Shown: positions 1,074 to 31,094, counted from the first letter of the stretch. The stretch: DNA of 64,000 bases from Vitrella brassicaformis CCMP3155 (GCA_001179505.1 CDMY01000324.1:1-64000); one strand, 5' to 3'. A program made the numbers and translations. The notes: generated by a model not told the origin, from the letters alone.

Positions 1074-4000
1074 ATGACAGGTCGACAGGACCGGGAGGGC
1101 GAGGCGGAGCCGATGGCAAGCTCCCCCCCCCGCCCTCGAGGGCAAGGAGGGGTGCTGTTGGCCGATCTCAGTGCGAGCTTAGTGTTGCATGCAAAGCCCC
1201 CAAGCTCGCATATGCGTTCGTTCTCCCCCCCCCACCCTCCTTTGTACAGATGGTGCGTCCATGAAAATAGTGCGAGTCCCGGAAAAGAACGGGGACGAAG
1301 GTGAGAGACGAAATGGATGTCGCTGAAGAGGCTCACCGAGGCGTCATTCCCACGTTTATCGCCCAGTGCGTGAAGGAGTACTCGACGACACCGTCATTCA
1401 CTTGCGTGACGAGGCTGCGGGAGAAGAGAACGGCTGTCCCAGGTCATGAGGAGACGGGCAGGGCAACGTTGAACCAACATCCTTGGTCACGAGTGAGCGA
1501 CTGCAGGAGAAAGCGGCTCTTTTCCACAGCGGAGCCTTCACAAGACTTAGTGTGTGTGTTTCTTCGTGCTTGAATGGTGTGTTCAGAGTCCTCGTTACGA
1601 GCCTGGTTTGGTTGAGTCGACGCTGAGAGCTCCGACAAAGGACGAGAAACCTATCCTGAGGTGACTCCTGTAACAGTTCCGCACACTGCAGTGAACCGGA
1701 TCTCTTTTGTTTGTCTCCAGAGTTCACTCGTACCTGGAGCACCTTCATGGCGAACTCGACAGGCAAAACATCGCTCTGCAGGTAAGCTCAATGCCGCTGC
1801 CTCTCTCGTCTCGATCTCAGCCCGCCTTCCCTTTGTCCGCTCTCAGCAGTCCCTGTTGCATGCGCAGAATCTTCGGAACGGAGAACGGGGAAAACGACGA
1901 TCCCCATCAACCTTTCTCGGATCTGGCCGAGCCGACTGCTCCCTGTATCAGGAGCAGGCAGAAGATGGTCTTCGCAGAGCCATCAGGAAACAGCCACCCG
2001 AAGAGAGGGACGCAGGTGAGACAAATATCCAACGGACAATGTCTGTCATCACTCCTGACATCGCTTGTTGTCAAGTTAGGCCGACATGTAAGAGGGAGCA
2101 GTCGGCTGAACGGCGGCATGACGCATGTATGCAAGGCAAAAACACCCTGATTCATTGAAGTCTTCATTCTCACTCTATGCAGGGGATCGATGGCGAGTGC
2201 CATGTCCGCAGACTTGATAAACGTGACCTCGGCGCACTGATCCCGTCATTTTATCCACCGCGGCCGGCCAAGCGTCTTCGCTCTCGGTCCCTCCCACCCC
2301 CAGAAACACAGGACGAGCAACAGGCACTGCTTCGCGACACGAGCGGTGAAAAAGAGCCGGGATTCGACGATGTCTTTGAGAAAGAAGCCGACACTGTCAG
2401 GGCGCAAACGAGAGACGGGATCCTCTTCCGTGATGGCCATCTGCTGACCCCTACTGCGAGAAACGAGCCAAGAGTATCATCGGTTCCGCCAGTGCCGCGC
2501 TCGACCGGGGTGATTATGAGAGAGCTGAAGCCCCATCCCAATCCTCTCGTCCTGCCGGCAGTCTCTCTCCGCCACTACCCAAACGAATACAGACAATGGC
2601 CAAGCCTCGACCCTTGTCCGCAAATGGCTGCGCAACTGAAGAATCTGGATGAGAGGAAAACGGCTCTGCTCCACCAGTCTAGGAGGGGCGAGAAGCGGGC
2701 GGCAAACGAGCAAGAACCATTCGATGTCATGTCTTGGTGGCGGGGAGACAGAATGCAGCATGGAGTCAATGCAAGAGAGGAAACGACGAAGCAACACAAT
2801 CCAGCGGAGGTCAGGCCCACGCCAGCAGACCAGACGGAGCCAAGAAAACCTGCGGAAGCGAGCCAACTTCAACCACAGCCAGATCCTCCGAGGACTGAAG
2901 ACAATGCGCCGTCACTGTCTGTATCGGCCTCGCCCCCGCCGCGCTCGCCCTCCCCCCACGACGAGCAAGCGCTCATACATCGCGATCGGTGAGACAAAAC
3001 ACGCCCGATACGCATTTTCGCTGCGATGACGTTTCCTTCTGCTGCTTCCGTGCAGTCAAGTGGTGAGATATTCAATTCGATGCCACCAGTCAGTGCGACA
3101 GCTCCTGAACAGCCCCCACAGCAGCCTGTTGATGCGGGATTTGAAAACGTCGCCGTGCCGGCGTTCAGCTTACCGCAAGAACCGGCTAAGGGCCCTTCGA
3201 GTGAGGAGATGCATAAGCAGGAAAGTATACATGACGAAAGTAGCGACATGTTTGGATCTGGCGGGTTGCAAGAGCGGCCAAGAGGCCTACACCGGGTATG
3301 GTTGCAGTCGAGCCAGCCATGGAAGAGGAAGAGGAAGAGGAAGAAGAGATCACAGCGTTGAACTTGACGGACGAGGTAAGGAGGAAGAACGACAAAGTCG
3401 ATCTGACTGCAATTCTCATTCTCTTATCTCCCGTAGATGGTGGCAAACGACGAAGACGTAGAGGACGTCGTCGAGCCTGCCGCCGAAGGTATGTCAACCA
3501 CGGTTGTGCGCAATGTCCAGCCATCCATCGACCACCCCGCATCCGTGTCTCTACCAAGGATCAAGAGGAGCGGTTCCTTCTCTCGCCATCCATCCAGAGA
3601 GTCCTATTCGTCATCTTCCACTTCGGTTTCACCTGTCGCTCCTCCAGCTCCCTGGGTCACGCCCCCCCATACACCGCCAATGCCCTCACCCAAGGCTGTC
3701 CATGCCGCACGAAGGAATTCTGACGCCCTCGTCGGGGCGATTGCCAAGTCTGGTGGTCTCAAAAAACTGTCGAGAGAGTGCGTCGTGCGTCGCTGCAGAC
3801 GCCCTTCCCGCGTCTTCGCTTACTGGCATTGACAGCCACTGTCGAAGACTAACACCGGAGGGGCTCGGTGTCGATGGTCGTGGAGGAGAAGGAAGAGCCT
3901 GAAGAAGTCCAGGCGGAAAGTGAAATGGCGCATCCCGCCGGTTCCGATGCTGGAAGCGTGGCGGGGAGGTCTGGGCGGGGTGAGGTGATAAGCCTGATGC

Positions 4001-15635: not shown

Positions 15636-16530
15636 GGTGTTGGGTCACTCCGAGGGTCGTTTGAGCGACCACACGTTGGCCTACATGGGGAGCACGACGG
15701 CGGCCATCGCGAATTGCCTGGGGCGGGTGGGGTGGGGCTACCTCACGGACCAATTCACCTTCAAGTTCTGCGTGGTATATAGGGCGACAAGAGCACACAC
15801 ATATGGGGGAATGGATGGATGGATGGATGTGTGTGCAGATGGCATTGGCGCTGATTGTGTGTGTCTTTGGGCTGAGCATCCGTTGGGCGGCCAGGTGGGG
15901 TGTGGTGCCCTTCTTCGTCTGGCTGTTCGCACTCTACTTCTGTGTCGGAGGTCAGGCAATCAATCAGTAATCAGCAAACACGGACACACACCACACAGAC
16001 GAAGGAACAGTCAGTCACCATCCACCCATTCGCTCCTGTCGTTGTGTCTATCGTTTCTGGTGAGTGCAGGCAACTTTGCCATGTTCCCTGCGGTGCGTGC
16101 AGACACACACCAATGCAGGGAGGCAGCAGGCATGCATATCGGCAGCCAAGTGGTGTGGTGTGGTGTGTCGCTGTCATTCCTGCAGGCGACTGCTCACACG
16201 TTTGGGGCGCAACACTTCGGTCCCAACTACGGGCTCATCTACACAGCCCGCGTTGCCAGCTCCCTACTGGTGGCCTCCCTCTTGGCATATACCTACCACC
16301 CTGCCGGCTTGGCGGGCGTGACATTCTGCATCGGCATGTGCAGCCTTCTCAGCATCTTTCTGGCGGCCTTTTTTGACCCGCAGCCTCTGCGACTGCGCCT
16401 TGACGCCTTCCAAAGCGATGTCCCGATCAGCACGACGGAGAGGCAGGTCCATCATGCGCCTCCGTGGCAGACGAGGCACCACTTTAGGGAGAGGAAGAGG
16501 GGGCATCAGAGACAATATGCAGCTCGGTGA
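14102..16530 (+). CDS. MFS transporter, oxalate:formate antiporter (OFA/OxlT)-like family
   Basis: Spliced TM-rich exons: GSMYTFGNLNLYITSY, GIQFGLANGIAFPCPLACAFRWMPKRRGLASG, EALTTPQFWLLW, LGRVGWGYLTD, GNFAMFPA, FGAQHFGPNYGLIYTA. Confidence 0.85.
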
Positions 16531-17024
16531 CATTTGTTGAGTTGCTGCTGGTCGGTGCTGAGTATGGATGTGGCTGTGCTGAAATCGCATGATGTGATGT
16601 GTGTTTTTCTGTGACCTGGTTGCAATTATTGTGTGCTCTGTCTGTATCTTCATGAGCCTTTGTGGTGCGGGCGATACAGACAGAGAGTACATTGACGGAG
16701 ACACTGCTCATATTTGTCACTTGAATGTCAGTGATGATGATATCAGTGACGTCTCTCTCTACACGAACATGTCACGCCTTGACATTCAACCATGGACGTC
16801 CGTGCGGAGAAAAAGTGCTAGCACATGGGAAAAGAATGAATCGTCGGTCTCTTTGAAGATGGATGCTAAAGTGGATGTCCATTTGTACCACCTCCTACCC
16901 GTCGGCTCACTCTGTCAGTGATCCAGAGGGCAAATGGCTGAGAAAGTGTGGCCGCCTTCCTTGCCTGCCGAACGCACTGCTGAGCTGGCTGCCGCCGTAG
17001 TTTGGCTGCAGTTTGTTGAGGTAG

Positions 17025-17125
17025 GGGTGACTCGGAACTGTGGGACCAGAAGGGAATTGGGTAGTGACACCAAGTGGCCCTGACCACCGAAGGCGAAGCT
17101 AGTGTTGTAGCATCTCGTGTTGGTG
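17025..17125 (-). mobile_element. Helitron Rep N-terminal-like fragment (TNTRCYNTSFAFGGQG...PQFRV)
   Basis: Resembles the Helitron NIRxYNxxFAF..G...FRI motif; short, no helicase seen. Confidence 0.4.
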
Positions 17126-17427
17126 GGCACCGCACCCACTCATAGGCGCCGCCGGTGGTTGGCACGGCGCCTGACGGGGTATTTGTGGGTGGTGTACTTC
17201 TCGTCAATATCCATAGGCCGCTCCCAGTACGAGACACGAGGGGGGTTGGCGACAGTAAGACCAACTGCACCACGCATACATACATACAAGCAGACAGACA
17301 GAGAATGAGGCCCTGCCGGCCGACCCGTCAGCTCCCCAACTGACTGACCTCGACACGGAATGCCTCTTGCTGGCCGCCGTCGGTCGGGGTCAGAGTTACG
17401 CCAGCGATGCGGTCGGGCACCATGCTG

Positions 17428-17560
17428 TTAGGCGTCGCAATTGGCGTCACTGTTCGGGTTCCTCGGACACTCGTGATGAAAGCGTTTCAAACCGCAGAAC
17501 TTGCATGTGATGTGGCACGGAAGGGGGCAGTTCCTGACTGTGTGCTCGACCTCCTTCATG
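17428..17560 (-). mobile_element. Gag-like C-terminal double zinc-knuckle fragment, copy A (HTVRNCPLPCHITCKFCGLKRFHHECPRNPNSDAN)
   Basis: Cys/His pattern ending in a stop at 17428; clear paralog at 19204-19365. Confidence 0.6.
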
Positions 17561-17639
17561 TACCACTTCCGCCCTCGACTTGGGAGTTGAAGATGTACAG
17601 ACTCCTTGCCGCCAGTCGAGGGCTTGATAATGTATAGAC

Positions 17640-18947
17640 AGACTCCTTGCCCCCAGTGATGCAAGATGTCATACGGCACGTTCTTCGCAGGACAGAAATT
17701 CTCAAAGCCAAACAACGCTATGCCGTCGGGGCAGTGCCGCATGCTGTAAGCCGACTCGGCCCTTTAGTAGCATCAGAGCCGTGTCTCTCGTCAACCAAAT
17801 CAACCCACCTCTTGCGCTTGTTCTTGGGGCTTGCCGCTCATCTATTTCGTCAATGATCTGCTCCTTGGAGTAGAGAAACCCCACCAGCTCGTATTCGTTT
17901 CGCCGGTCGTACTCAGCTGTGTTGAGGAAGCGGTCGACTCTCTCGCGAATGGTTCTGGACGCCGTGTGGCGGATGAGCAGGGGGCCACAAACGAGGTCAG
18001 AGGTCCCTGCCTCGCTGAAGAGGGAACCAGACAACAGCACTGGATGCACTATCACACCCCAAACGCATTCGCTTACTTTCGTCGGGGATCTCCTGGATGG
18101 CTATGGGGTCGCCGCCCTCTGAACACAAACATACAAACACACACAAGTAACACACACAGAGACACACACACAGAGACACACACAGACACACGCAGAGAGC
18201 AGGGAAATGGAGAAGTGACAGCAAGTGCATCAGTGTGGGGCTGTTGAGTCTGACCTCTCGAGGGCTGCACCGGCTGTCCATTCTCATCGTCCTCACCGAT
18301 AAGACGTGCTGGACGGAGGGTTGGGGTGGACACCGACGCTCGCCCGAGAGGGAGAAGTATGCCGACGCTCACCCGAGTGAGAAGCACGAGGGTGCATACC
18401 TGAGTGAGAAGCACAGGGCATGCGCGACACCCCGGTCCGCTATGTTCTTGATCGCCTTATACGTACGCCCATCGCATGCATGTCCAGTACAAGTGGGCTC
18501 AATCTGAAGCACAAATTGGCCATCAAAGAGACAGGCCGTTACTCGCTAGGACTCCAAATCGATCGACATTACCTCAATCGCTTTCAGATGTATTCGTTGC
18601 GCGCGAAACACCGACATCTGCATGGCCTCGACGGTGAAGGGCTGCTGTATGCACAGAGGGCTCTGGAGCCTCACGGGAATAAGGGGATATTTTGTCTCCA
18701 CTACCGGTACGTCTACCGGTGTACTGCAAAGAGCCAATTCAATCCAAGCCGTGACAGACCTCGCGTGTATATGTATGTGCATTCTTACTCGTCCTTCATG
18801 TGTCTGGAGATCTTCGGTACACAGAGGATGCAATCATCAGACAGCATCAGCCGGCTGTGTTCCAGTCTTGTGTAGTTCATCAGAATGTTCAGGTCCTGGG
18901 TGCCCTCGGACTGCACAGAGATCACCTGGCCGGATACCGTTGTGATG
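17640..18947 (-). mobile_element. Intron-containing, frameshifted CMC (CACTA/Plavaka-like) transposase fragment
   Basis: Exons 18947-18789, 18723-18574, 18503-~18410 and 18118 onward splice in frame; ends FGFENFCPAKNVPYDILHHWGQGV (F-D-P..P-x-D-x-L-H..G-V-like motif); 1-nt frameshift near 17825; truncated at 17640. Confidence 0.5.
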
Positions 18948-19203
18948 CTGCGAGCAAACAAATGCCAACCAACAGATACACAAACCCTAGACATCCAAGA
19001 TACCCTCCTTACGCTCACGCCAGAAAGTTCATGTCTGTGTCCGACGCGAGATTGCCTTTCCGCTCTTTCAAACTATACTGCCTCGTCTTCTGAAAGGGCG
19101 ACACACAACAACTCCTTGGTATTGGGGCTCCTTGGTATTGGGGAGGGGGTGAGTTTTGGGTGTGGCTATGGACCCCAGCTGTGTGTTGCCCTGTCCGGCT
19201 GGC

Positions 19204-19560
19204 TCACTGTTTATCGCGGTTTGCGTCGCTGTTTGGGTTTCTCGGACAGTCATAATGGAAGTGTTCCCGCAGAATTTGCATATAATCATGCACGGGTTGG
19301 GGCAGTTGCGGACGCTGTGCTTGTGGTATTGCGCCGTTTGCCGTGTCCTGCAGTTTGCGCATTGTCCGGCTGAAACGATTCCTTCTGTTGGCGCCGCGCT
19401 TGCCGTGGTGTGCTGCTGGAACGCTGGTGGGGTTATGGGGCGAGGGCGAGCCGCGAGAGTCCGCAGTGGGTTGATGGGAGGAGCCAGGACGGCCGGCGGC
19501 GTGTTGGGCCTGGTAGGGGCGACTTGGGCCAGCCGGCGGACCATTCCGTGGTCCAAAGTG
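19204..19560 (-). mobile_element. Gag-like C-terminal fragment, copy B (CANC...HKHSVRNCPNPCMIICKFCG-fs-HFHYDCPRNPNSDAN), frameshifted
   Basis: Homologous to copy A; ~4-nt deletion near 19265 shifts the frame. Confidence 0.6.
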
Positions 19561-19580
19561 ATGGAGAAGCGGCCGCCTGC

Positions 19581-20450
19581 TCAGAGGCCGCTCGCCTGCC
19601 GAATAGCTGCCACTATGCTTTCTTCCCACATGTGCGTGTGACAGTGTGCGGCCGAGCACGCCAGGAGTGCGCTGCGGAGCTGAGCGAACCGGTGCGCGTC
19701 GGCCCTCTCGCTGTCGATGTTGGATATATTGACACACAATGTTGATGGCGACGATCTCAGGAAAAGTAACGAACGAGAACAGCGAGAACAGCGAAAACTC
19801 TTGGGCAACGCAAACTGATATGGCCTGTACATACACGCAGGCAACACACATTAATACAAATTTCGAGACACAAACAAACACAAGCAGGAGACATGGAGAC
19901 ACAAGTTTTCGCACCAGAGCTCGTTGACGGCTGCAACAGTGTTGCGACGGAAGTCATGCACGACATTCATGTCGATGACCTCCTCGCGGGGGACGAGATT
20001 CAGGGCCTGAGCTGCTGCAATAAACAAACAGTCGCCGCGGCCAGCGTTGTTCGTCCGCACGAAACGGCGGTCGTGCCGTCCCCATCTATAGCCGTCAACT
20101 CTCGCTCTGCAAGATAGACCGGACGAGCGTCTTACTGGCTTTCTTTCTACTCCTCACCTTGCAGATAATCGAGGAACTTCGGCGACGACCGGCTCCAGCT
20201 GGTGTCCCTGAGAAAGAGACGAGGGGGTCGAGGGTGGCTGAGGGATGAAGTTGAGTGGTGGTGATGGAGGCGTGAATGTCTCCTCCCAGACACACCCGCG
20301 ACACTCCCCTGCAAGCATACAGACAGGTCCATGGGTGTCCGCTTTGACGAAAACGAACTTCCTTGCTTACGTCAAGGGAGAGAACTGAAAGGGATTCACG
20401 AACTCGTCTACAAGTGAGCGCACTTTTGTCTTCTGCACAGCTACGGGGGC
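19581..20450 (-). pseudogene. Spliced OTU-like cysteine protease gene fragment
   Basis: In-frame splicing across about four introns gives ...RFVRTNNAGRGDCLFIAAAQAL...HDFRRNTVAAVNELW|PYQF; GDCLF resembles the OTU catalytic-Cys motif; no clear start. Confidence 0.55.
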
Positions 20451-20499
20451 AGTAGACGGACTGAATCGAGCCCAGCAATGCTGCCGTGAAAGACTGAGT

Positions 20500-21000
20500 G
20501 TATATCCTTGCTGGACTTGCTGGCTGATGTCCACCATGTTCAGTCGAATGAGGGAGCCTCGCTCATGGTCGGGCAGACGTCCACGGGTCCTGCGGGGCCG
20601 GTCTGGCGGTGGCTTTCGTGGTTATATTGGCGACTGCTCGGCATACTCCGACCAGCAGCTGCTCGTGCTTGTGGTCGAGGTGATTGACGATGCTGTGCAG
20701 GTCGCGCATCGAGTCAGCCAGTGTCTCCTGGACGTCTGCCACGGTGTCTCAGACGATGTCGGCACTCGTTTGCAGAGCATATCATGACCCACCACCACGG
20801 CCGCCGTGACGATCCTGATGGTATCGTCGAAGTTGGCAGAAAGTGCTTGAAACGCCGAGTTGCGTCACGAGCTGCTTGATGACGGCTTTCATGCCCGCCA
20901 GCTTCTGCCCGTCGGCAGGGAGCTGCGCAGCAATCTGCTGAGCGAGGATGCGCCGTTGATGACAAGCCGTGTCTTCTGCCGCCCGTCTGCCTTGGTCGTC
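20500..21000 (-). pseudogene. Stop-interrupted coiled-coil/gag-like ORF remnant
   Basis: One frame (ILAQQIAAQLP...DTVADVQETLADSMRDLHSIVNHLD) with several in-frame stops. Confidence 0.3.
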
Positions 21001-21004
21001 CTTC

Positions 21005-21235
21005 TGCGCGCCCCTAGGGACGTCACGTCTCTTGCGCCAAACGTAGGTCTCGTACTGCTCGAGTTTGTCGACCTCAGCAACGTCCGACTCTCGCCACCGC
21101 TGTTGGTCCTGTGGGCTCATCCTCCTGATGATGGACGGGGTGACCTTCATGCCCGGCATCCACTTGACGTAGTTGTGACCAGAAACGGATGGGCTGCCAT
21201 GGCGCCGTGGCTGGTCTGCCGTGAACGCCCAAGCT
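21005..21235 (-). mobile_element. Ty1/copia pre-RT/RT-start fragment
   Basis: SPQDQQRWRESDVAEVDKLEQYETYVWRKRRDVPRGA matches the copia W..A...E..sL....Tw.lv..P.G pattern, then breaks off. Confidence 0.6.
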
Positions 21236-21310
21236 GCTGGAAGCGGTCGACCAGCCTAGTTCATGTTCTCCCTCCACTGCTGAATCGACAGGTTGCCGCT
21301 TCAGCTGCCA

Positions 21311-21400
21311 CGCGCAGGATCGTGCATTGCAATGCGGGCACTGCACCCACGTGTCCTTTGGATATTCCTCCATGCACACCAGACAGTATTCGGAGATCCC
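21311..21400 (-). mobile_element. PHD-finger-like fragment (YCLVCMEEYPKDTWVQCPHCNARSC)
   Basis: CxxC-x7-WVQCxxC spacing typical of the first half of a PHD finger. Confidence 0.5.
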
Positions 21401-21520
21401 AGCGACGGATCGTCTCTCCCATGGCAATCGGCCGGACGCCTCCTGTCGCGACACCCTCGTCATTGGTCTTCTCGAACGCGCTCAAGCGGGCTGCTGAGAG
21501 GAAGGGGCGGAGGGAGGGGG
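21400..21520 (-). mobile_element. CRE/R2-type non-LTR retrotransposon reverse-transcriptase fragment
   Basis: AARLSAFEKTNDEGVATGGVRPIAMGETIRRW matches the RLIAL.K..GGVRPIAVGE.LRR motif. Confidence 0.7.
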
Positions 21521-21789
21521 GCACGCGTGAGTGGACGAGCAGACCGAGTTGGGGATGGGCACTTTGCATCACCAGTTGTGTTCAGCTCTTGTGTCCCTTC
21601 AACTTGCACGTTGCCCACACTGGTAGACGACTCATCACCATAAGTCGAGTCATGAACGTCGCAGGTAATTTGGCTGCATTGTGGCTGCGTTTTTAGGCTT
21701 CTAAACGTCTCAAATTCTCGACCCCCAAGCTGGCCGTCTGCAAATTCAGATGATATGCAGACTGGGGGCGAAGAGGGGGAAAACACCTC

Positions 21790-24399
21790 ATGGCATCTAC
21801 TGGGAGCAGCCAGTCTCCACGATGCGAGTACGCAGTGGACGTGCCAGGCCACCTGTCAGTCAGGGAGGTATACGCAGAAAGGACATCCCTGCATTCTGAT
21901 GAGTCAGTGATGCTATTTCCCTTCGTTACGTACAGGCTGGTGAAGAGGAAGAAAGGCCGAGAAGGGATAAGGTTGGCCAAGGAGTCAGTGCGTTGCGACA
22001 TTCGGTCTGACGACGGTATGTTGTTTCTTCAGTACATGTGTCTGGTAGATGTCAAGGACCACATTCGGCGTATCTATGAGGAGCCCAAGAAACGGCTCCG
22101 CAAGAGGGAGGTTTATGTGCCCGAGGCCGACCTCGGCCTGGCTGCTGAAGAGGCCGAGGAGCAACTTCCTGTGGAGAAGGTCAGTCATCGACAGGCCAAC
22201 CGCCATGTTTTTTTAGAGAGAGAGGAGCCCATTTGGATCTTGTTCTTTGCAGCTTGACCTCAAGAAGCCTCCGACCCCGCCCGCTTCGGAACGTGAGAGA
22301 GGGTGGATGGGGGACAGGGATGGCGACTGCAGTCAGGTTCTCTCGTCTTTCCAGGCGAGTTGGAGTTCGATGACTTCATGTTCGATGAGGATATCGCTCT
22401 CTATCGACATGAAGTCGTCATGGTACCAGCCGCCGCTGCCTCATGGTCCCTAATGTATGCCCGGCTGTCACTGCAGGAAGCTGTGAGGCCGCCACCGAAG
22501 ATCGATGACCCCATGACGCATCCAATCACTGTTGAAGGTACAGCGCGGGAGGCACGAACGATTGAGCCAAATGAGTGGCGGTATCTCGGCCTTTTCTCTG
22601 GTTCTCAGGTGACATAACGGTTGGCACTGAGGTGACCTTCGTCGACCTGTCTGAGTGGAAGAAAGAGTTCCCCGTCCATCACGTCGAGTGGTACGATAGA
22701 CAGCCAACCATCACGCTGCCCGTCATTTAGAGCAGGCGTCTCTCACCCAGGAGCATCTCCAATGACAGCCGACAGCCGCCCATCTTCCCCCCCATCCCCA
22801 TGTCCTACAAGCCCCACTTTATCCTGCCAACGCACAGCTTCTCGCGATACGTGCAAGTCAAGGCAACCAGAAGGGTTGAGGACCAGGTGAGAACTCCGGC
22901 CGCTCTGTGTGTCTCCCCAATTACAAGCATCTCTTCCTCGTTGTGTCTGTTTGCCATTCCAGATGGCATCGACGTTTGCGCGTCACAGAGAGGGTGGAAC
23001 ATTCGATACGCATGTGCGTCACTCCACACCCCACACCACCGAAACGAAAGGGAGACGCTTTGTGGTGAGACGAAAAGAATGACACGCAGTGCAGTTGGTC
23101 GGCTTCCCACACTGCCATGTCTCCCACCCTAGGACGTCATGTCGACTTCCGTCGCCGGGTGGGTAAGCATGCCTGCTGCCGATAACAGAGTGCGGCATCG
23201 TGATTGTGCTGATTGGGCAGCCCCATAGGTCTCGCCGATTCGTGGGCGTACGTGGCGCTCAAGGCACTCGCCAAGGGAGGCTTCAGGTCAGGAATGAATC
23301 GCTGAGGATTCATGCCCTCATCGCTATGGATGGTGTGCCTCCGACGTGCGTGCAGCTGTGCTGTGCGATTCAGGGGAGAGGTGGAAAGGATACCAGTAAG
23401 GGACAAAAAAATAGCAGGAACAGCAGGTACCACTCTTTCTGTGGCTCTCAAGGAAAATGTTGACGATGCGGCAACCGATCAGCAGAGCGGCAGCAAGAGC
23501 AAGACCTCCAAGAGTGGCGGCAAAAGGGCAGGGAGAAGACGGAGCTCCCAAGGGCCGAAGCAGCACGAGTCCGAGGCCGATGAAAAGACGGATGAAAGCG
23601 AGGCCTCGTCTGCAGATGCCAAGGTACGCTGGCCAGCACCCAGACCTAACAAAAGCGACGACGGCCGTGGGTTGTCCGTCCAGTTGAAATACCCCGGGAC
23701 AGTAATTACAGACCTGGCAAAAGGTGTGTCGCTGCCTGAAGAGGACACGAATACATCAGGCATCGATTCTCTCCATCTCAGGTGAGCTGACCCTCTTGTG
23801 GGCATCTGTCGTTAGCGAAAAGGAGAAGGCCGACAAAGGCCGAGACACGACAGGCACGGCATGGAGCGGCTTCGACTTTTCGGCCCTTGGGTTCAGCCTC
23901 TTCGGCTCCGGTGGGGACGACAAGGCCAAAAGAGTCAGGAAAAACGCCAAGGCCGACAAGAAGAAAGGCGCGACCAAGAAGGGAAAGAAGGCTGCTGACG
24001 AGCCGCCGGCTGCTGAGGGTGAACAAGGCAAGGAGGTCATCAGCCATCGGGTCTATGCCGTCAATTTGTTCCGCTTCCGGCCCGCGAAGGACTCTCGGAG
24101 GCTCTACATCACACTGGACGACCCATTGATCAAAGAGACCTAGTAAGATGAGACAAAAATGCCATATCAACTCTTTACTCAGCGCTCATTCAGTTGTGTG
24201 TTTGTGTTTGTGCAGTGACGTCCGTGTCGAGATTGACCCTGCAGTGGGACGCGACATCGCCCTCTATGTGCTGATGGCCTTCAGGTCTGCCCACGTCAAG
24301 GGCCTGAAGGCGGCACACTGGCAGCAGCACTTCAAGGAGGGGCAGCTGGAGGCCGTCACCGACCTTATGCTGCCGGAGGAAGAGGACTCGTATGCGTGA
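21790..24399 (+). CDS. Multi-exon hypothetical protein
   Basis: GC3-rich exons with canonical introns, ending DVRVEIDPAVGRDIALYVLMAF...EEEDSYA; the middle exons (22.6-23.3 kb) are unresolved. Confidence 0.5.

Positions 24400-25483: not shown

Positions 25484-31094
<5,611 letters not shown>

What the first reader, a model, noticed from the sequence alone, without database searches (positions are those of the whole stretch)
16600..21700. Single-strand patchwork of fragments from at least five unrelated mobile-element classes: candidate transposon-trap/small-RNA memory locus, or a fragment-capturing element
Seen: along the minus strand, short pieces follow one another at abrupt junctions: CRE/R2-type RT, PHD finger, copia RT start, gag-like coiled coil, spliced OTU, gag knuckle B, spliced CMC-like transposase, gag knuckle A, Helitron-Rep-like motif. 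None is a full element and no LTR or TIR is evident. All eight motif-recognisable pieces share one polarity (about 1/128 if independent and random), antisense to both flanking + genes. Known: Drosophila flamenco-type piRNA clusters hold co-oriented antisense TE fragments, and maize Helitrons capture co-oriented, intron-containing fragments. Inference: this could be an antisense TE archive feeding RNA silencing in a chromerid, or serial DNA-level capture by a rolling-circle element.
Basis: partly seen in the sequence, partly recalled or inferred. Interest (0 to 1): 0.85.

Follow-up and report, generated by a model that had tools for sequence, protein, structure and literature searches.

The report
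Same-direction patchwork of retroelement fragments
A 5-kb spacer between two genes of the alga Vitrella brassicaformis is a real, old, single-copy patchwork of at least 13 short internal pieces of jumping genes and other repeats that nearly all point the same way. It looks like decaying repair or copying debris, and nothing tested here shows a small-RNA "memory" locus or a mobile element.

Summary
The mosaic is real. An independent DNA run tiles it at 100% identity. A marine-sediment metagenome has identical contigs across seven or more of its junctions.

About half of 16600-21700 consists of 13 pieces of 64-690 bp. Each matches a different dispersed family at 75-92% identity, with abrupt ends. 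As a whole the mosaic occurs once in the 72.7-Mb genome.

Identities confirmed through the donor copies:
- an RVT_1 LINE reverse transcriptase (RT);
- the start of a copia RT;
- ORF1 of a LINE that carries an AP-endonuclease (APE);
- exon 1 plus the intron of an OTU gene;
- two zinc-knuckle pieces.

The "CMC transposase" and "Helitron Rep" pieces are not supported, and the "PHD" piece is only weakly RING-like.

All 8 pieces with a firm coding sense, and 2 probable ones, lie on the minus strand. By chance that is 1/128 to 1/512, before allowing for how the locus was picked.

No RNA contig of the mosaic exists in two transcriptome-like assemblies. There is no LTR, TIR, poly(A) or significant target-site duplication. 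The pieces carry stops and frameshifts and are joined out of frame.

Best reading: template-switching copy synthesis at a break, using transcription-linked templates. I prefer RT template jumping for this locus.

The scan has found a similar same-direction patchwork in this genome before (s1-205508). I found another at C602.

The small-RNA and Helitron readings remain untested or unsupported.

The parts
21398..21580 (-). 183-bp internal piece of a non-LTR (RVT_1) reverse-transcriptase ORF, carrying one stop and one frameshift
   Evidence: 86-90% identical to C279 (two copies), C376 and C719. The donor ORF of 700+ aa hits RVT_1 at E 4e-9 and continues on both sides of the piece.
21330..21393 (.). 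64-bp Cys-rich (RING/PHD-like) piece; coding sense not resolved
   Evidence: 92% identical to C501 and 77% to C13, where it lies downstream of the OTU gene. The window ORF has a weak zf-C3HC4_2 hit, E 0.057. About 7 unassigned nt separate it from the RT piece.
20952..21176 (-). 225-bp piece of the start of a copia-type RT
   Evidence: 75-78% identical to C164 and C258. The donor ORF hits RVT_2 at E 7e-19 inside a near full-length copia element. It is truncated inside the ORF at 20952.
20617..20957 (-). 341-bp piece of the coiled-coil ORF1 of an APE-type LINE
   Evidence: 89% identical to C359 and 75% to C613 and C541. The codon-phase test places the coding sense on the window minus strand. Exo_endo_phos and RVT_1 ORFs lie downstream on the same strand in three donors.
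20346..20446 (.). 101-bp piece of a low-copy family (C499, C1028, C255); nature and sense unknown
   Evidence: 87% identical to C499. Donor ORFs have no Pfam hit.
19894..20125 (-). Exon 1 (catalytic-Cys box), an intron of about 85 nt and the first few nt of exon 2 of an OTU-protease gene
   Evidence: 84% identical to the single full gene at C13. The alignment runs through the GT...AG intron. Donor exon 2 hits OTU at E 0.003.
19214..19321 (-). Zinc-knuckle piece B, frameshifted
   Evidence: 79% identical to C348 and 74% to knuckle A. The Cys/His motif reads on the minus strand.
18417..19106 (-). 690-bp piece of an unknown coding family (C886); sense probable only
   Evidence: 78% identical to C886:3432-4118. 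Substitutions show 3-base periodicity. Minus-strand frames have the higher amino-acid identity in 6 of 6 tblastx blocks. A RING ORF lies on the same strand of C886.
18306..18418 (-). End of a 27-bp minisatellite plus its flank, from the 5' region of a LINE lineage
   Evidence: Matches C642, C590, C822 and C278. In C590, C822 and C278 it lies 1.2-2 kb upstream of RT copies in a fixed relative orientation.
18121..18200 (-). GT-rich microsatellite as read on the minus strand, intron-like for this genome
   Evidence: skipped as a repeat.
17836..18005 (-). 170-bp piece of a Vitrella-only protein family of six or more copies
   Evidence: 76-86% identical to C492, C846, C823, C1003 and C33. The codon-phase test gives minus sense. 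The donor ORF is an annotated uncharacterised V. brassicaformis protein with no Pfam domain.
17639..17767 (-).
   Evidence: 92% identical to C741. The best tblastx frame is on the minus strand at 91%. No transposase relationship was found. A 20-nt direct duplication sits at its 3' end (repeat D5).
17435..17546 (-). Zinc-knuckle piece A
   Evidence: 87% identical to C348. It shares a tail with knuckle B that C348 lacks.
17117..17245 (.).
   Evidence: 88% identical to C676 and 94% to C86. Substitutions show no codon periodicity. No Pfam hit.
16400..16740 (+). 3' end of the upstream MFS-transporter mRNA, which sets the left limit of the spacer
   Evidence: RNA contigs end at 16698 and 16740. The 1888-nt contig encodes the full 505-aa MFS protein.

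Best explanation
The locus is a fixed, decaying patchwork with no shown function, and it is not a mobile element. Short internal stretches of transcribed repeats were copied and stitched head to tail into an intergenic spacer. These include two LINE families, a copia element, an OTU gene, a zinc-knuckle family and several unknown families. The copying polymerase switched templates repeatedly, most likely in one episode or a few episodes of chromosome-break repair.

Every piece whose sense can be read is sense on one strand, and retroelement sequence is heavily over-represented. The templates were therefore probably linked to transcription. My preferred version is a LINE reverse transcriptase jumping between sense RNAs, with the OTU piece copied from an unspliced transcript. 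The alternative version is DNA-level repair synthesis on exposed sense strands.

Shown here: the mosaic, its breakpoints, its polarity, that it is single-copy, and that it is real DNA. Inferred: the copying mechanism and the number of events.
For: REAL DNA
- Independent DNA contigs and a metagenome bridge the junctions at 100% identity.

TRUE BREAKPOINTS
- Donor ORFs (RT, copia RT, LINE ORF1) continue beyond the ends of the pieces. Similarity falls from 78-89% to nothing within a few bases.
- Three junctions are direct, with 0-7 nt of filler or 1-2 nt of microhomology, and they are out of frame.

POLARITY
- 8 firm and 2 probable pieces all lie on the minus strand.

COMPOSITION
- At least 4 of the 13 pieces are retroelement sequence: the RT, the copia RT, the LINE ORF1 and the LINE 5' minisatellite. 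TEs make up only 1.5 of 72.7 Mb of the genome (PMC4501334).
- The other 59 kb of the window has no match to any donor locus.

EXPRESSED DONORS
- Transcripts of the RT, ORF1 and minisatellite paralogues appear in RNA assemblies.

AGE
- No piece is more than 92% identical to any extant copy, although young copies of the RT family exist at 93-98% identity. This fits one old episode.

RECURRENCE
- A second patchwork at C602 holds another OTU-exon fragment, a ubiquitin-like piece (Pfam E 1.7e-8) and a C886 piece. The two pieces with a firm sense are co-oriented.
- An earlier scan note reports 12 co-oriented gene pieces at another locus (s1-205508).

PRECEDENT
- LINE RT template jumps give directly fused, co-oriented chimeras (PMC2104539).
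- Synthesis-dependent end joining gives templated patches (PMC2943611).
Against: - There is no poly(A) and no LINE 3' end at the 3' side. The best candidate target-site duplication (13 of 14 nt) is matched or beaten in 19% of control segment pairs.
- Known RT-jump chimeras have 2-3 parts, not 13.
- The OTU piece keeps an intron. This favours DNA or pre-mRNA over mature RNA as the template.
- Half of the region has no donor anywhere in the genome. Part of it may therefore be original spacer with pieces inserted separately.
- Short local duplications at junctions are no more frequent than in control segments.
- The co-orientation was the reason the locus was picked, so its P value is inflated by ascertainment.
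- Three pieces have unknown sense, and one (17117-17245) leans weakly the other way.
Confidence: 0.5

Rival explanations
1. An ordinary TE graveyard. Independent insertions of whole or truncated elements into a tolerant spacer were later trimmed by many deletions. The shared orientation is then chance plus ascertainment, or mild selection against sense-strand TE signals between two co-directional genes.
For: - Vitrella is compact and TE-poor, which implies strong deletion.
- Half of the region is unique sequence that could be original spacer.
- The pieces are old and carry stops and frameshifts.
- The locus was selected because it looked co-oriented.
Against: - Every piece is a short internal fragment. 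No element end, LTR or LINE 3' end survives.
- No two pieces are collinear remnants of one insertion.
- Three junctions join different families base to base.
- The model needs about 20 or more well-placed deletions and 8-10 same-sense insertions, P 1/128 to 1/512.
- A second patchwork and an earlier scan note show the same polarity.
Confidence: 0.2
2. A dead chimeric gene. The minus strand once carried a multi-exon gene assembled from element-derived exons, as in other Vitrella 'gene-building' patchworks. Only sense-oriented pieces were kept as exons, and the spacers were introns.
For: - GT-rich, intron-like tracts read on the minus strand.
- The OTU piece keeps an exon-intron structure.
- A 104-aa open frame spans two pieces and their spacer at 17431-17742.
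- Earlier scan notes describe gene-building patchworks in this genome.
Against: - There are stops and frameshifts inside the pieces, and directly joined pieces are out of frame.
- No RNA contig covers it.
- ORFs of 100-160 aa are common on both strands in this GC-rich DNA.
Confidence: 0.1
3. A uni-strand small-RNA source locus of the flamenco type. Read-through or dedicated plus-strand transcription would give RNA antisense to many element families, which is then processed into silencing small RNAs.
For: - Multi-family, co-oriented TE fragments lie antisense to the verified upstream + gene.
- Piwi-domain genes are present at four or more loci above the Pfam cut-off.
Against: - No transcript contig runs beyond 16740 in two RNA assemblies that do contain the neighbouring mRNA.
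- Only 0-25% of 21-mers are shared exactly with the sampled live copies, and for most pieces under 10%.
- The locus is only about 2.6 kb of recognisable TE or repeat sequence, and all of it is old.
- No fragment from the youngest copies has been added.
Confidence: 0.07
4. The cargo of a non-autonomous capturing transposon (Helitron, Pack-type or CACTA) that inserted here once.
For: - Co-oriented, intron-containing captured fragments are typical of maize Helitrons (established knowledge).
- A PIF1-like helicase ORF lies next to the OTU donor at C13.
Against: - The mosaic, and every pair of adjacent pieces, occurs once in the genome.
- No TIR and no terminal hairpin repeat were seen.
- No Rep domain was detected in the window or in the putative donor.
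Confidence: 0.05
5. An assembly chimera made by walking through repeats.
For: The pieces are of read or k-mer scale, and the independent contigs break at repeat edges.
Against: - A separate run gives a 3108-bp contig with no differences across eight or more junctions.
- A 2025 sediment metagenome has identical contigs across the junctions at 17117/17245, 17767/17836, 20446, 20952, 21176, 21330-21398 and 21580.
- The pieces differ by 8-25% from every other copy.
Confidence: 0.01

Closest known systems
LINE-mediated chimeric retrocopies made by RT template switching (mammalian U6/L1 chimeras; Magnaporthe MGL bipartite and tripartite chimeras, PMC2104539)
   Same: Copies of different transcripts are fused directly, all in one transcriptional orientation, with LINE sequences among them. 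The result is non-functional.
   Different: Known cases have 2-3 parts, a LINE or poly(A) 3' end and target-site duplications. Here there are at least 13 internal pieces, no 3' hallmark, no significant duplication and one retained intron.
Filler DNA and templated insertions from synthesis-dependent end joining or MMBIR-type template switching (for example PMC2943611)
   Same: Short templated patches are copied from intact donors elsewhere. Junctions are abrupt, with 0-7 nt of filler or microhomology. One 20-nt and one 16-nt local duplication sit at piece ends.
   Different: Such mechanisms do not predict a shared sense orientation or a strong bias toward retroelement sequence. The total size (about 4.5 kb) and the number of pieces are large.
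Uni-strand piRNA clusters (Drosophila flamenco)
   Same: Fragments of many TE families lie in one orientation in a single locus.
   Different: Flamenco is hundreds of kb long, is transcribed and yields abundant piRNAs. Here there is about 2.6 kb of old fragments, no transcript contig, and small RNAs are untested.
Maize non-autonomous Helitrons and Pack-MULEs carrying several gene fragments
   Same: Multi-fragment, intron-containing and mostly co-oriented cargo.
   Different: Those have defined termini and multiple copies. Here there are none.
The Vitrella gene-fragment patchwork noted earlier in this scan (s1-205508) and the C602 locus found here
   Same: Same genome, same architecture: short copies of pieces of other loci, all pointing one way, with introns retained.
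   Different: Those are built mainly from host-gene pieces. This one is built mainly from retroelement pieces.

Membership tests
uni-strand piRNA-type cluster | Fragments of several TE families in one orientation | tested here: met
   8 firm and 2 probable pieces on the minus strand, from three or more retroelement families.
uni-strand piRNA-type cluster | Long precursor transcript across the locus | tested here: inconclusive
   Two RNA assemblies have no contig of the mosaic, although they hold the neighbouring mRNA. Contigs cannot exclude rare RNA.
uni-strand piRNA-type cluster | Abundant small RNAs antisense to the elements | not testable with these tools
   No small-RNA run was available.
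uni-strand piRNA-type cluster | PIWI/Argonaute machinery in the genome | tested here: inconclusive
   Piwi-domain hits at four loci above the cut-off. The clade (Ago versus Piwi) was not resolved.
uni-strand piRNA-type cluster | Enough identity to live elements to guide silencing | tested here: inconclusive
   For most pieces fewer than 10% of 21-mers are shared exactly with the sampled copies; RT 25%, minisatellite 30%.
Helitron with captured fragments | Defined termini (5' TC, 3' CTRR with a hairpin) | tested here: inconclusive
   No inverted repeat or hairpin at either edge in the repeat scan. The ends were read by eye only and no dedicated scanner was run.
Helitron with captured fragments | Several copies of the composite element | tested here: not met
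   The whole and every adjacent pair of pieces are single-copy.
Helitron with captured fragments | Rep/helicase remnant or an autonomous partner linked to it | tested here: not met
   The claimed Rep-like motif and its donor have no Pfam hit.
LINE template-switch chimeric retrocopy | Parts fused directly in one transcriptional orientation | tested here: met
LINE template-switch chimeric retrocopy | 3' part is a LINE 3' end or a poly(A) tail | tested here: not met
   No A or T run of 6 or more in the region. The 3'-most pieces are not LINE ends.
LINE template-switch chimeric retrocopy | Flanking target-site duplication | tested here: inconclusive
   The best candidate (13 of 14 nt, at 16997 and 21665) is equalled in 19% of control pairs. 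At this age power is low.
LINE template-switch chimeric retrocopy | Copies of processed (intron-less) RNAs | tested here: not met
   The OTU piece retains the donor's inferred intron.
filler-DNA / templated-insertion patchwork | Short pieces copied from donors that remain intact elsewhere | tested here: met
filler-DNA / templated-insertion patchwork | Junctions with microhomology or a few untemplated bases | tested here: met
   Three junctions show 0-7 nt. The sample is small.
filler-DNA / templated-insertion patchwork | Excess of short local repeats at junctions (the synthesis-dependent signature) | tested here: not met
   3 local direct repeats against 0-12 in control segments.
LTR retrotransposon or nested-insertion remnant | LTRs, or collinear pieces of one element | tested here: not met
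   No long direct repeats. No second copia or LINE piece is collinear with the first.

The most novel reading that the evidence does not exclude
Vitrella may have a recurrent, transcription-linked copy-and-stitch process that builds same-direction patchworks at several loci. It could work by reverse-transcriptase template jumping on nuclear RNAs, or by repair synthesis on sense strands exposed by transcription. This locus would be its retroelement-rich product. The process would be a source of new chimeric genes. Alternatively, this product could serve as a small uni-strand antisense archive for RNA silencing in a chromerid.
Probability: 0.2. Interest if true: 0.75.

Novelty: new variant of a known kind. 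Interest (0 to 1): 0.42.

Why it matters
If the shared polarity is systematic, it points to a way of making sequence mosaics that depends on transcription, either on RNA templates or on transcription-exposed DNA. That has not been described for alveolates. It would help explain the many mosaic and "patchwork" genes of Vitrella, a free-living relative of the apicomplexan parasites.

If the polarity is chance, the locus is ordinary decaying repeat debris. Either way, the tests here give no support for treating it as a demonstrated piRNA-like cluster or Helitron.

Tried and rejected
- Pfam on the ten window ORFs gave nothing significant.
- tRNA and Rfam scans of the region gave nothing. The T-arm-like loose ends belong to the paralogue contigs, not to the window.
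- For the 'CMC transposase' I tried an Atlas feature search (best score 0.83, uninformative) and a phmmer search of 1.84 billion proteins. The phmmer hits were the protein's own cluster and a C-terminal repeat motif in giant proteins. None covered the part held by the window.
- The target-site duplication search was not significant.
- A poly(A) search found none.
- Local-repeat enrichment at junctions was not seen.
- The codon-phase test on 17117-17245 showed no signal.
- The downstream gene has no Pfam hit and no homologue in the allowed length range, which is an uninformative blank.
- The public gene annotation of the window could not be retrieved, because the genome's own records are left out.
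Exons were searched one at a time by reference.

Full report
IDENTITY OF THE GENOME. The window is contig C324 of a 72.7-Mb, 1064-contig assembly. This matches the published Vitrella brassicaformis genome (PMC4501334). Donor proteins are recorded as V. brassicaformis CCMP3155.

IS THE MOSAIC REAL?
- A DNA search of the whole genome with 16600-21700 found the full stretch only once. It also found about 40 short matches elsewhere, each covering a different sub-segment.
- I fetched 10 kb around 20 of those places and re-aligned them. The similarity never extends beyond 64-690 bp, by blastn or by tblastx.
- Contigs of an independent DNA run tile 16400-21900 with no differences. One 3108-bp contig (18385-21492) crosses eight or more junctions.
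- A 2025 marine-sediment metagenome contains identical contigs across the junctions at 17117/17245, 17767/17836, 20446, 20952, 21176, 21330-21398 and 21580.
- Misassembly is therefore excluded.

WHAT THE PIECES ARE. The window ORFs themselves hit nothing in Pfam. The donors are informative.
- 21398-21580 is 183 bp from inside an RVT_1 ORF of 700+ aa. That ORF belongs to a multi-lineage LINE family with no upstream APE in the copies read.
- 20952-21176 is the start of the RVT_2 domain of a near-complete copia element.
- 20617-20957 comes from a coiled-coil ORF. In three donors an Exo_endo_phos ORF and an RVT_1 ORF follow it on the same strand, so it is a LINE ORF1.
- 19894-20125 is exon 1 of a low-copy OTU gene at C13. 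The similarity runs through an intron of about 85 nt bounded by GT...AG and stops a few bases into exon 2.
- Two pieces (17435-17546 and 19214-19321) are diverged copies of one zinc-knuckle family.
- 18306-18418 is the end of a 27-bp minisatellite. In three contigs this minisatellite lies 1.2-2 kb upstream of LINE RT copies.
- 17836-18005 belongs to a Vitrella-only protein family.
- 18417-19106 is coding-derived, with 3-base periodicity of substitutions, but its family is unidentified.
- The 'PHD' piece is at best weakly RING-like.
- Recognisable pieces add up to about 2.6 kb. The spacers between them have no other copy in the genome.

BREAKPOINTS.
- The donor ORFs continue past the ends of the pieces, so the fragments are genuinely truncated on both sides.
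- At 20952 the copia RT piece joins the LINE ORF1 piece with 1-2 nt of shared bases, out of frame.
- About 7 unassigned nt lie between the RT piece and the Cys-rich piece. The minisatellite and C886 pieces abut directly.
- Short direct duplications (20 nt and 16 nt) sit at two piece ends. Such repeats are no commoner here than in control segments.

POLARITY.
- Coding sense was assigned in four ways: by Pfam-positive donor ORFs (RT, copia), by codon-phase tests on aligned donors (LINE ORF1 and the 17836 family; position 2 < 1 < 3 in the only stop-free frame), by motif and ORF (OTU, knuckles), and by fixed linkage to RT (minisatellite).
- All eight are sense on the window's minus strand.
- Two more are probably the same. 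For C886, minus-strand frames have the higher identity in 6 of 6 tblastx blocks. For C741, the best frame is on the minus strand.
- Three pieces are undetermined.
- The chance expectation is 1/128 to 1/512, but the locus was chosen for this property.
- The upstream gene is a verified plus-strand MFS transporter whose mRNA ends at about 16700-16740. The downstream gene's strand is only inferred.

FUNCTION.
- Two transcriptome-like assemblies contain the MFS mRNA and transcripts of paralogous RT, ORF1 and minisatellite sequences with 10 or more mismatches. They contain no contig of the mosaic.
- The pieces carry stops and frameshifts.
- Few 21-24-mers match the sampled live copies exactly.
- Piwi-domain genes exist in the genome, so a silencing role cannot be excluded. 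Nothing positive supports it.
- There is no LTR or TIR, no poly(A), no significant target-site duplication and no second copy. Nothing marks the locus as an element.

CONTEXT IN THE GENOME.
- TEs are only about 2% of this genome. Yet at least 4 of the 13 pieces are retroelement sequence, and the remaining 59 kb of the window has no match to any donor locus.
- A fragment of the same OTU exon at C602 lies in a second patchwork. That locus also holds a ubiquitin-like piece (Pfam E 1.7e-8), another part of the C886 family and two other families. The ubiquitin-like and OTU pieces are co-oriented.
- Earlier notes of this scan describe an 8-kb patchwork of 12 gene pieces 'all pointing the same way' (s1-205508). 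They also describe CRE-like retrotransposons with RING and OTU modules. I used these notes as leads only.
- The RT donors I read do not contain the OTU, zinc-finger or C886 pieces. The pieces therefore do not map to one element.

MECHANISM.
- Many short internal fragments, base-precise joins, intact donors and no element hallmarks fit template-switching copy synthesis better than insertion followed by deletion.
- The shared sense and the retroelement bias point to templates tied to transcription.
- I prefer reverse-transcriptase jumping between sense RNAs. This is known for LINEs, but only for 2-3 parts (PMC2104539).
- The retained intron, the missing 3' hallmarks and the unique spacers keep DNA-level repair synthesis (PMC2943611) and a simple graveyard alive as alternatives.
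- No piece is more than 92% identical to any extant copy, although young RT copies exist. This fits one old episode.

VERDICT. The two proposed functions are unsupported, and the class list was overstated. Similar patchworks have already been seen in this genome by this scan.

Noticed in passing
L033 (G000:C602:8523-13739), pieces at about 1579-3671: A second patchwork locus. It holds an OTU exon-1 fragment, a ubiquitin-family piece (Pfam E 1.7e-8 on donor L036), a piece of C886:5198-5547 and two other families, each matching a different contig. The OTU and ubiquitin-like pieces share one strand.
   Followed up: partly
L013 (G000:C13:5000-14999): The only full copy of the OTU gene lies next to plus-strand ORFs with a PIF1-like helicase (E 2e-6) and a GIY-YIG nuclease (E 8e-8). 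This combination may be a mobile element and was not identified further.
   Followed up: no
L012, L016, L028 (C359, C613, C541): Near-complete LINEs with a coiled-coil ORF1 followed by Exo_endo_phos and RVT_1 ORFs. Several assembly gaps lie inside them.
   Followed up: partly
L017 (G000:C164:158000-167999): A near full-length copia-type element (gag with a CCHC knuckle, integrase region, RVT_2) broken by a few frameshifts.
   Followed up: no
C590:33-93, C822:13854-13968, C278:133416-133503, L026 8005-8112 and 9249-9386: A 27-bp minisatellite sits 1.2-2 kb upstream of RT copies of one LINE lineage. It also forms arrays at C642 and is present in RNA assemblies.
   Followed up: partly
window 16400-21900 (runs X10-X13): Marine-sediment metagenomes from 2025 carry contigs 100% identical to this non-coding Vitrella spacer. 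The same strain or a very close one therefore occurs in those sediments.
   Followed up: no
L019 3240-3653 minus strand (C741): The C-terminal half of this 138-aa ORF matches a motif of about 35 aa that is repeated 9-24 times in giant (2200-4100 aa) metagenomic proteins.
   Followed up: no
L011 355-1002 minus strand (C886): A RING-finger ORF (zf-RING_2, E 1e-10) lies on the same strand as, and downstream of, the unknown coding family that donated the 690-bp piece.
   Followed up: no
window 28861-30751 plus strand: ORFs with MCM P-loop and MCM lid domains, indicating an MCM helicase gene about 7 kb downstream.
   Followed up: no
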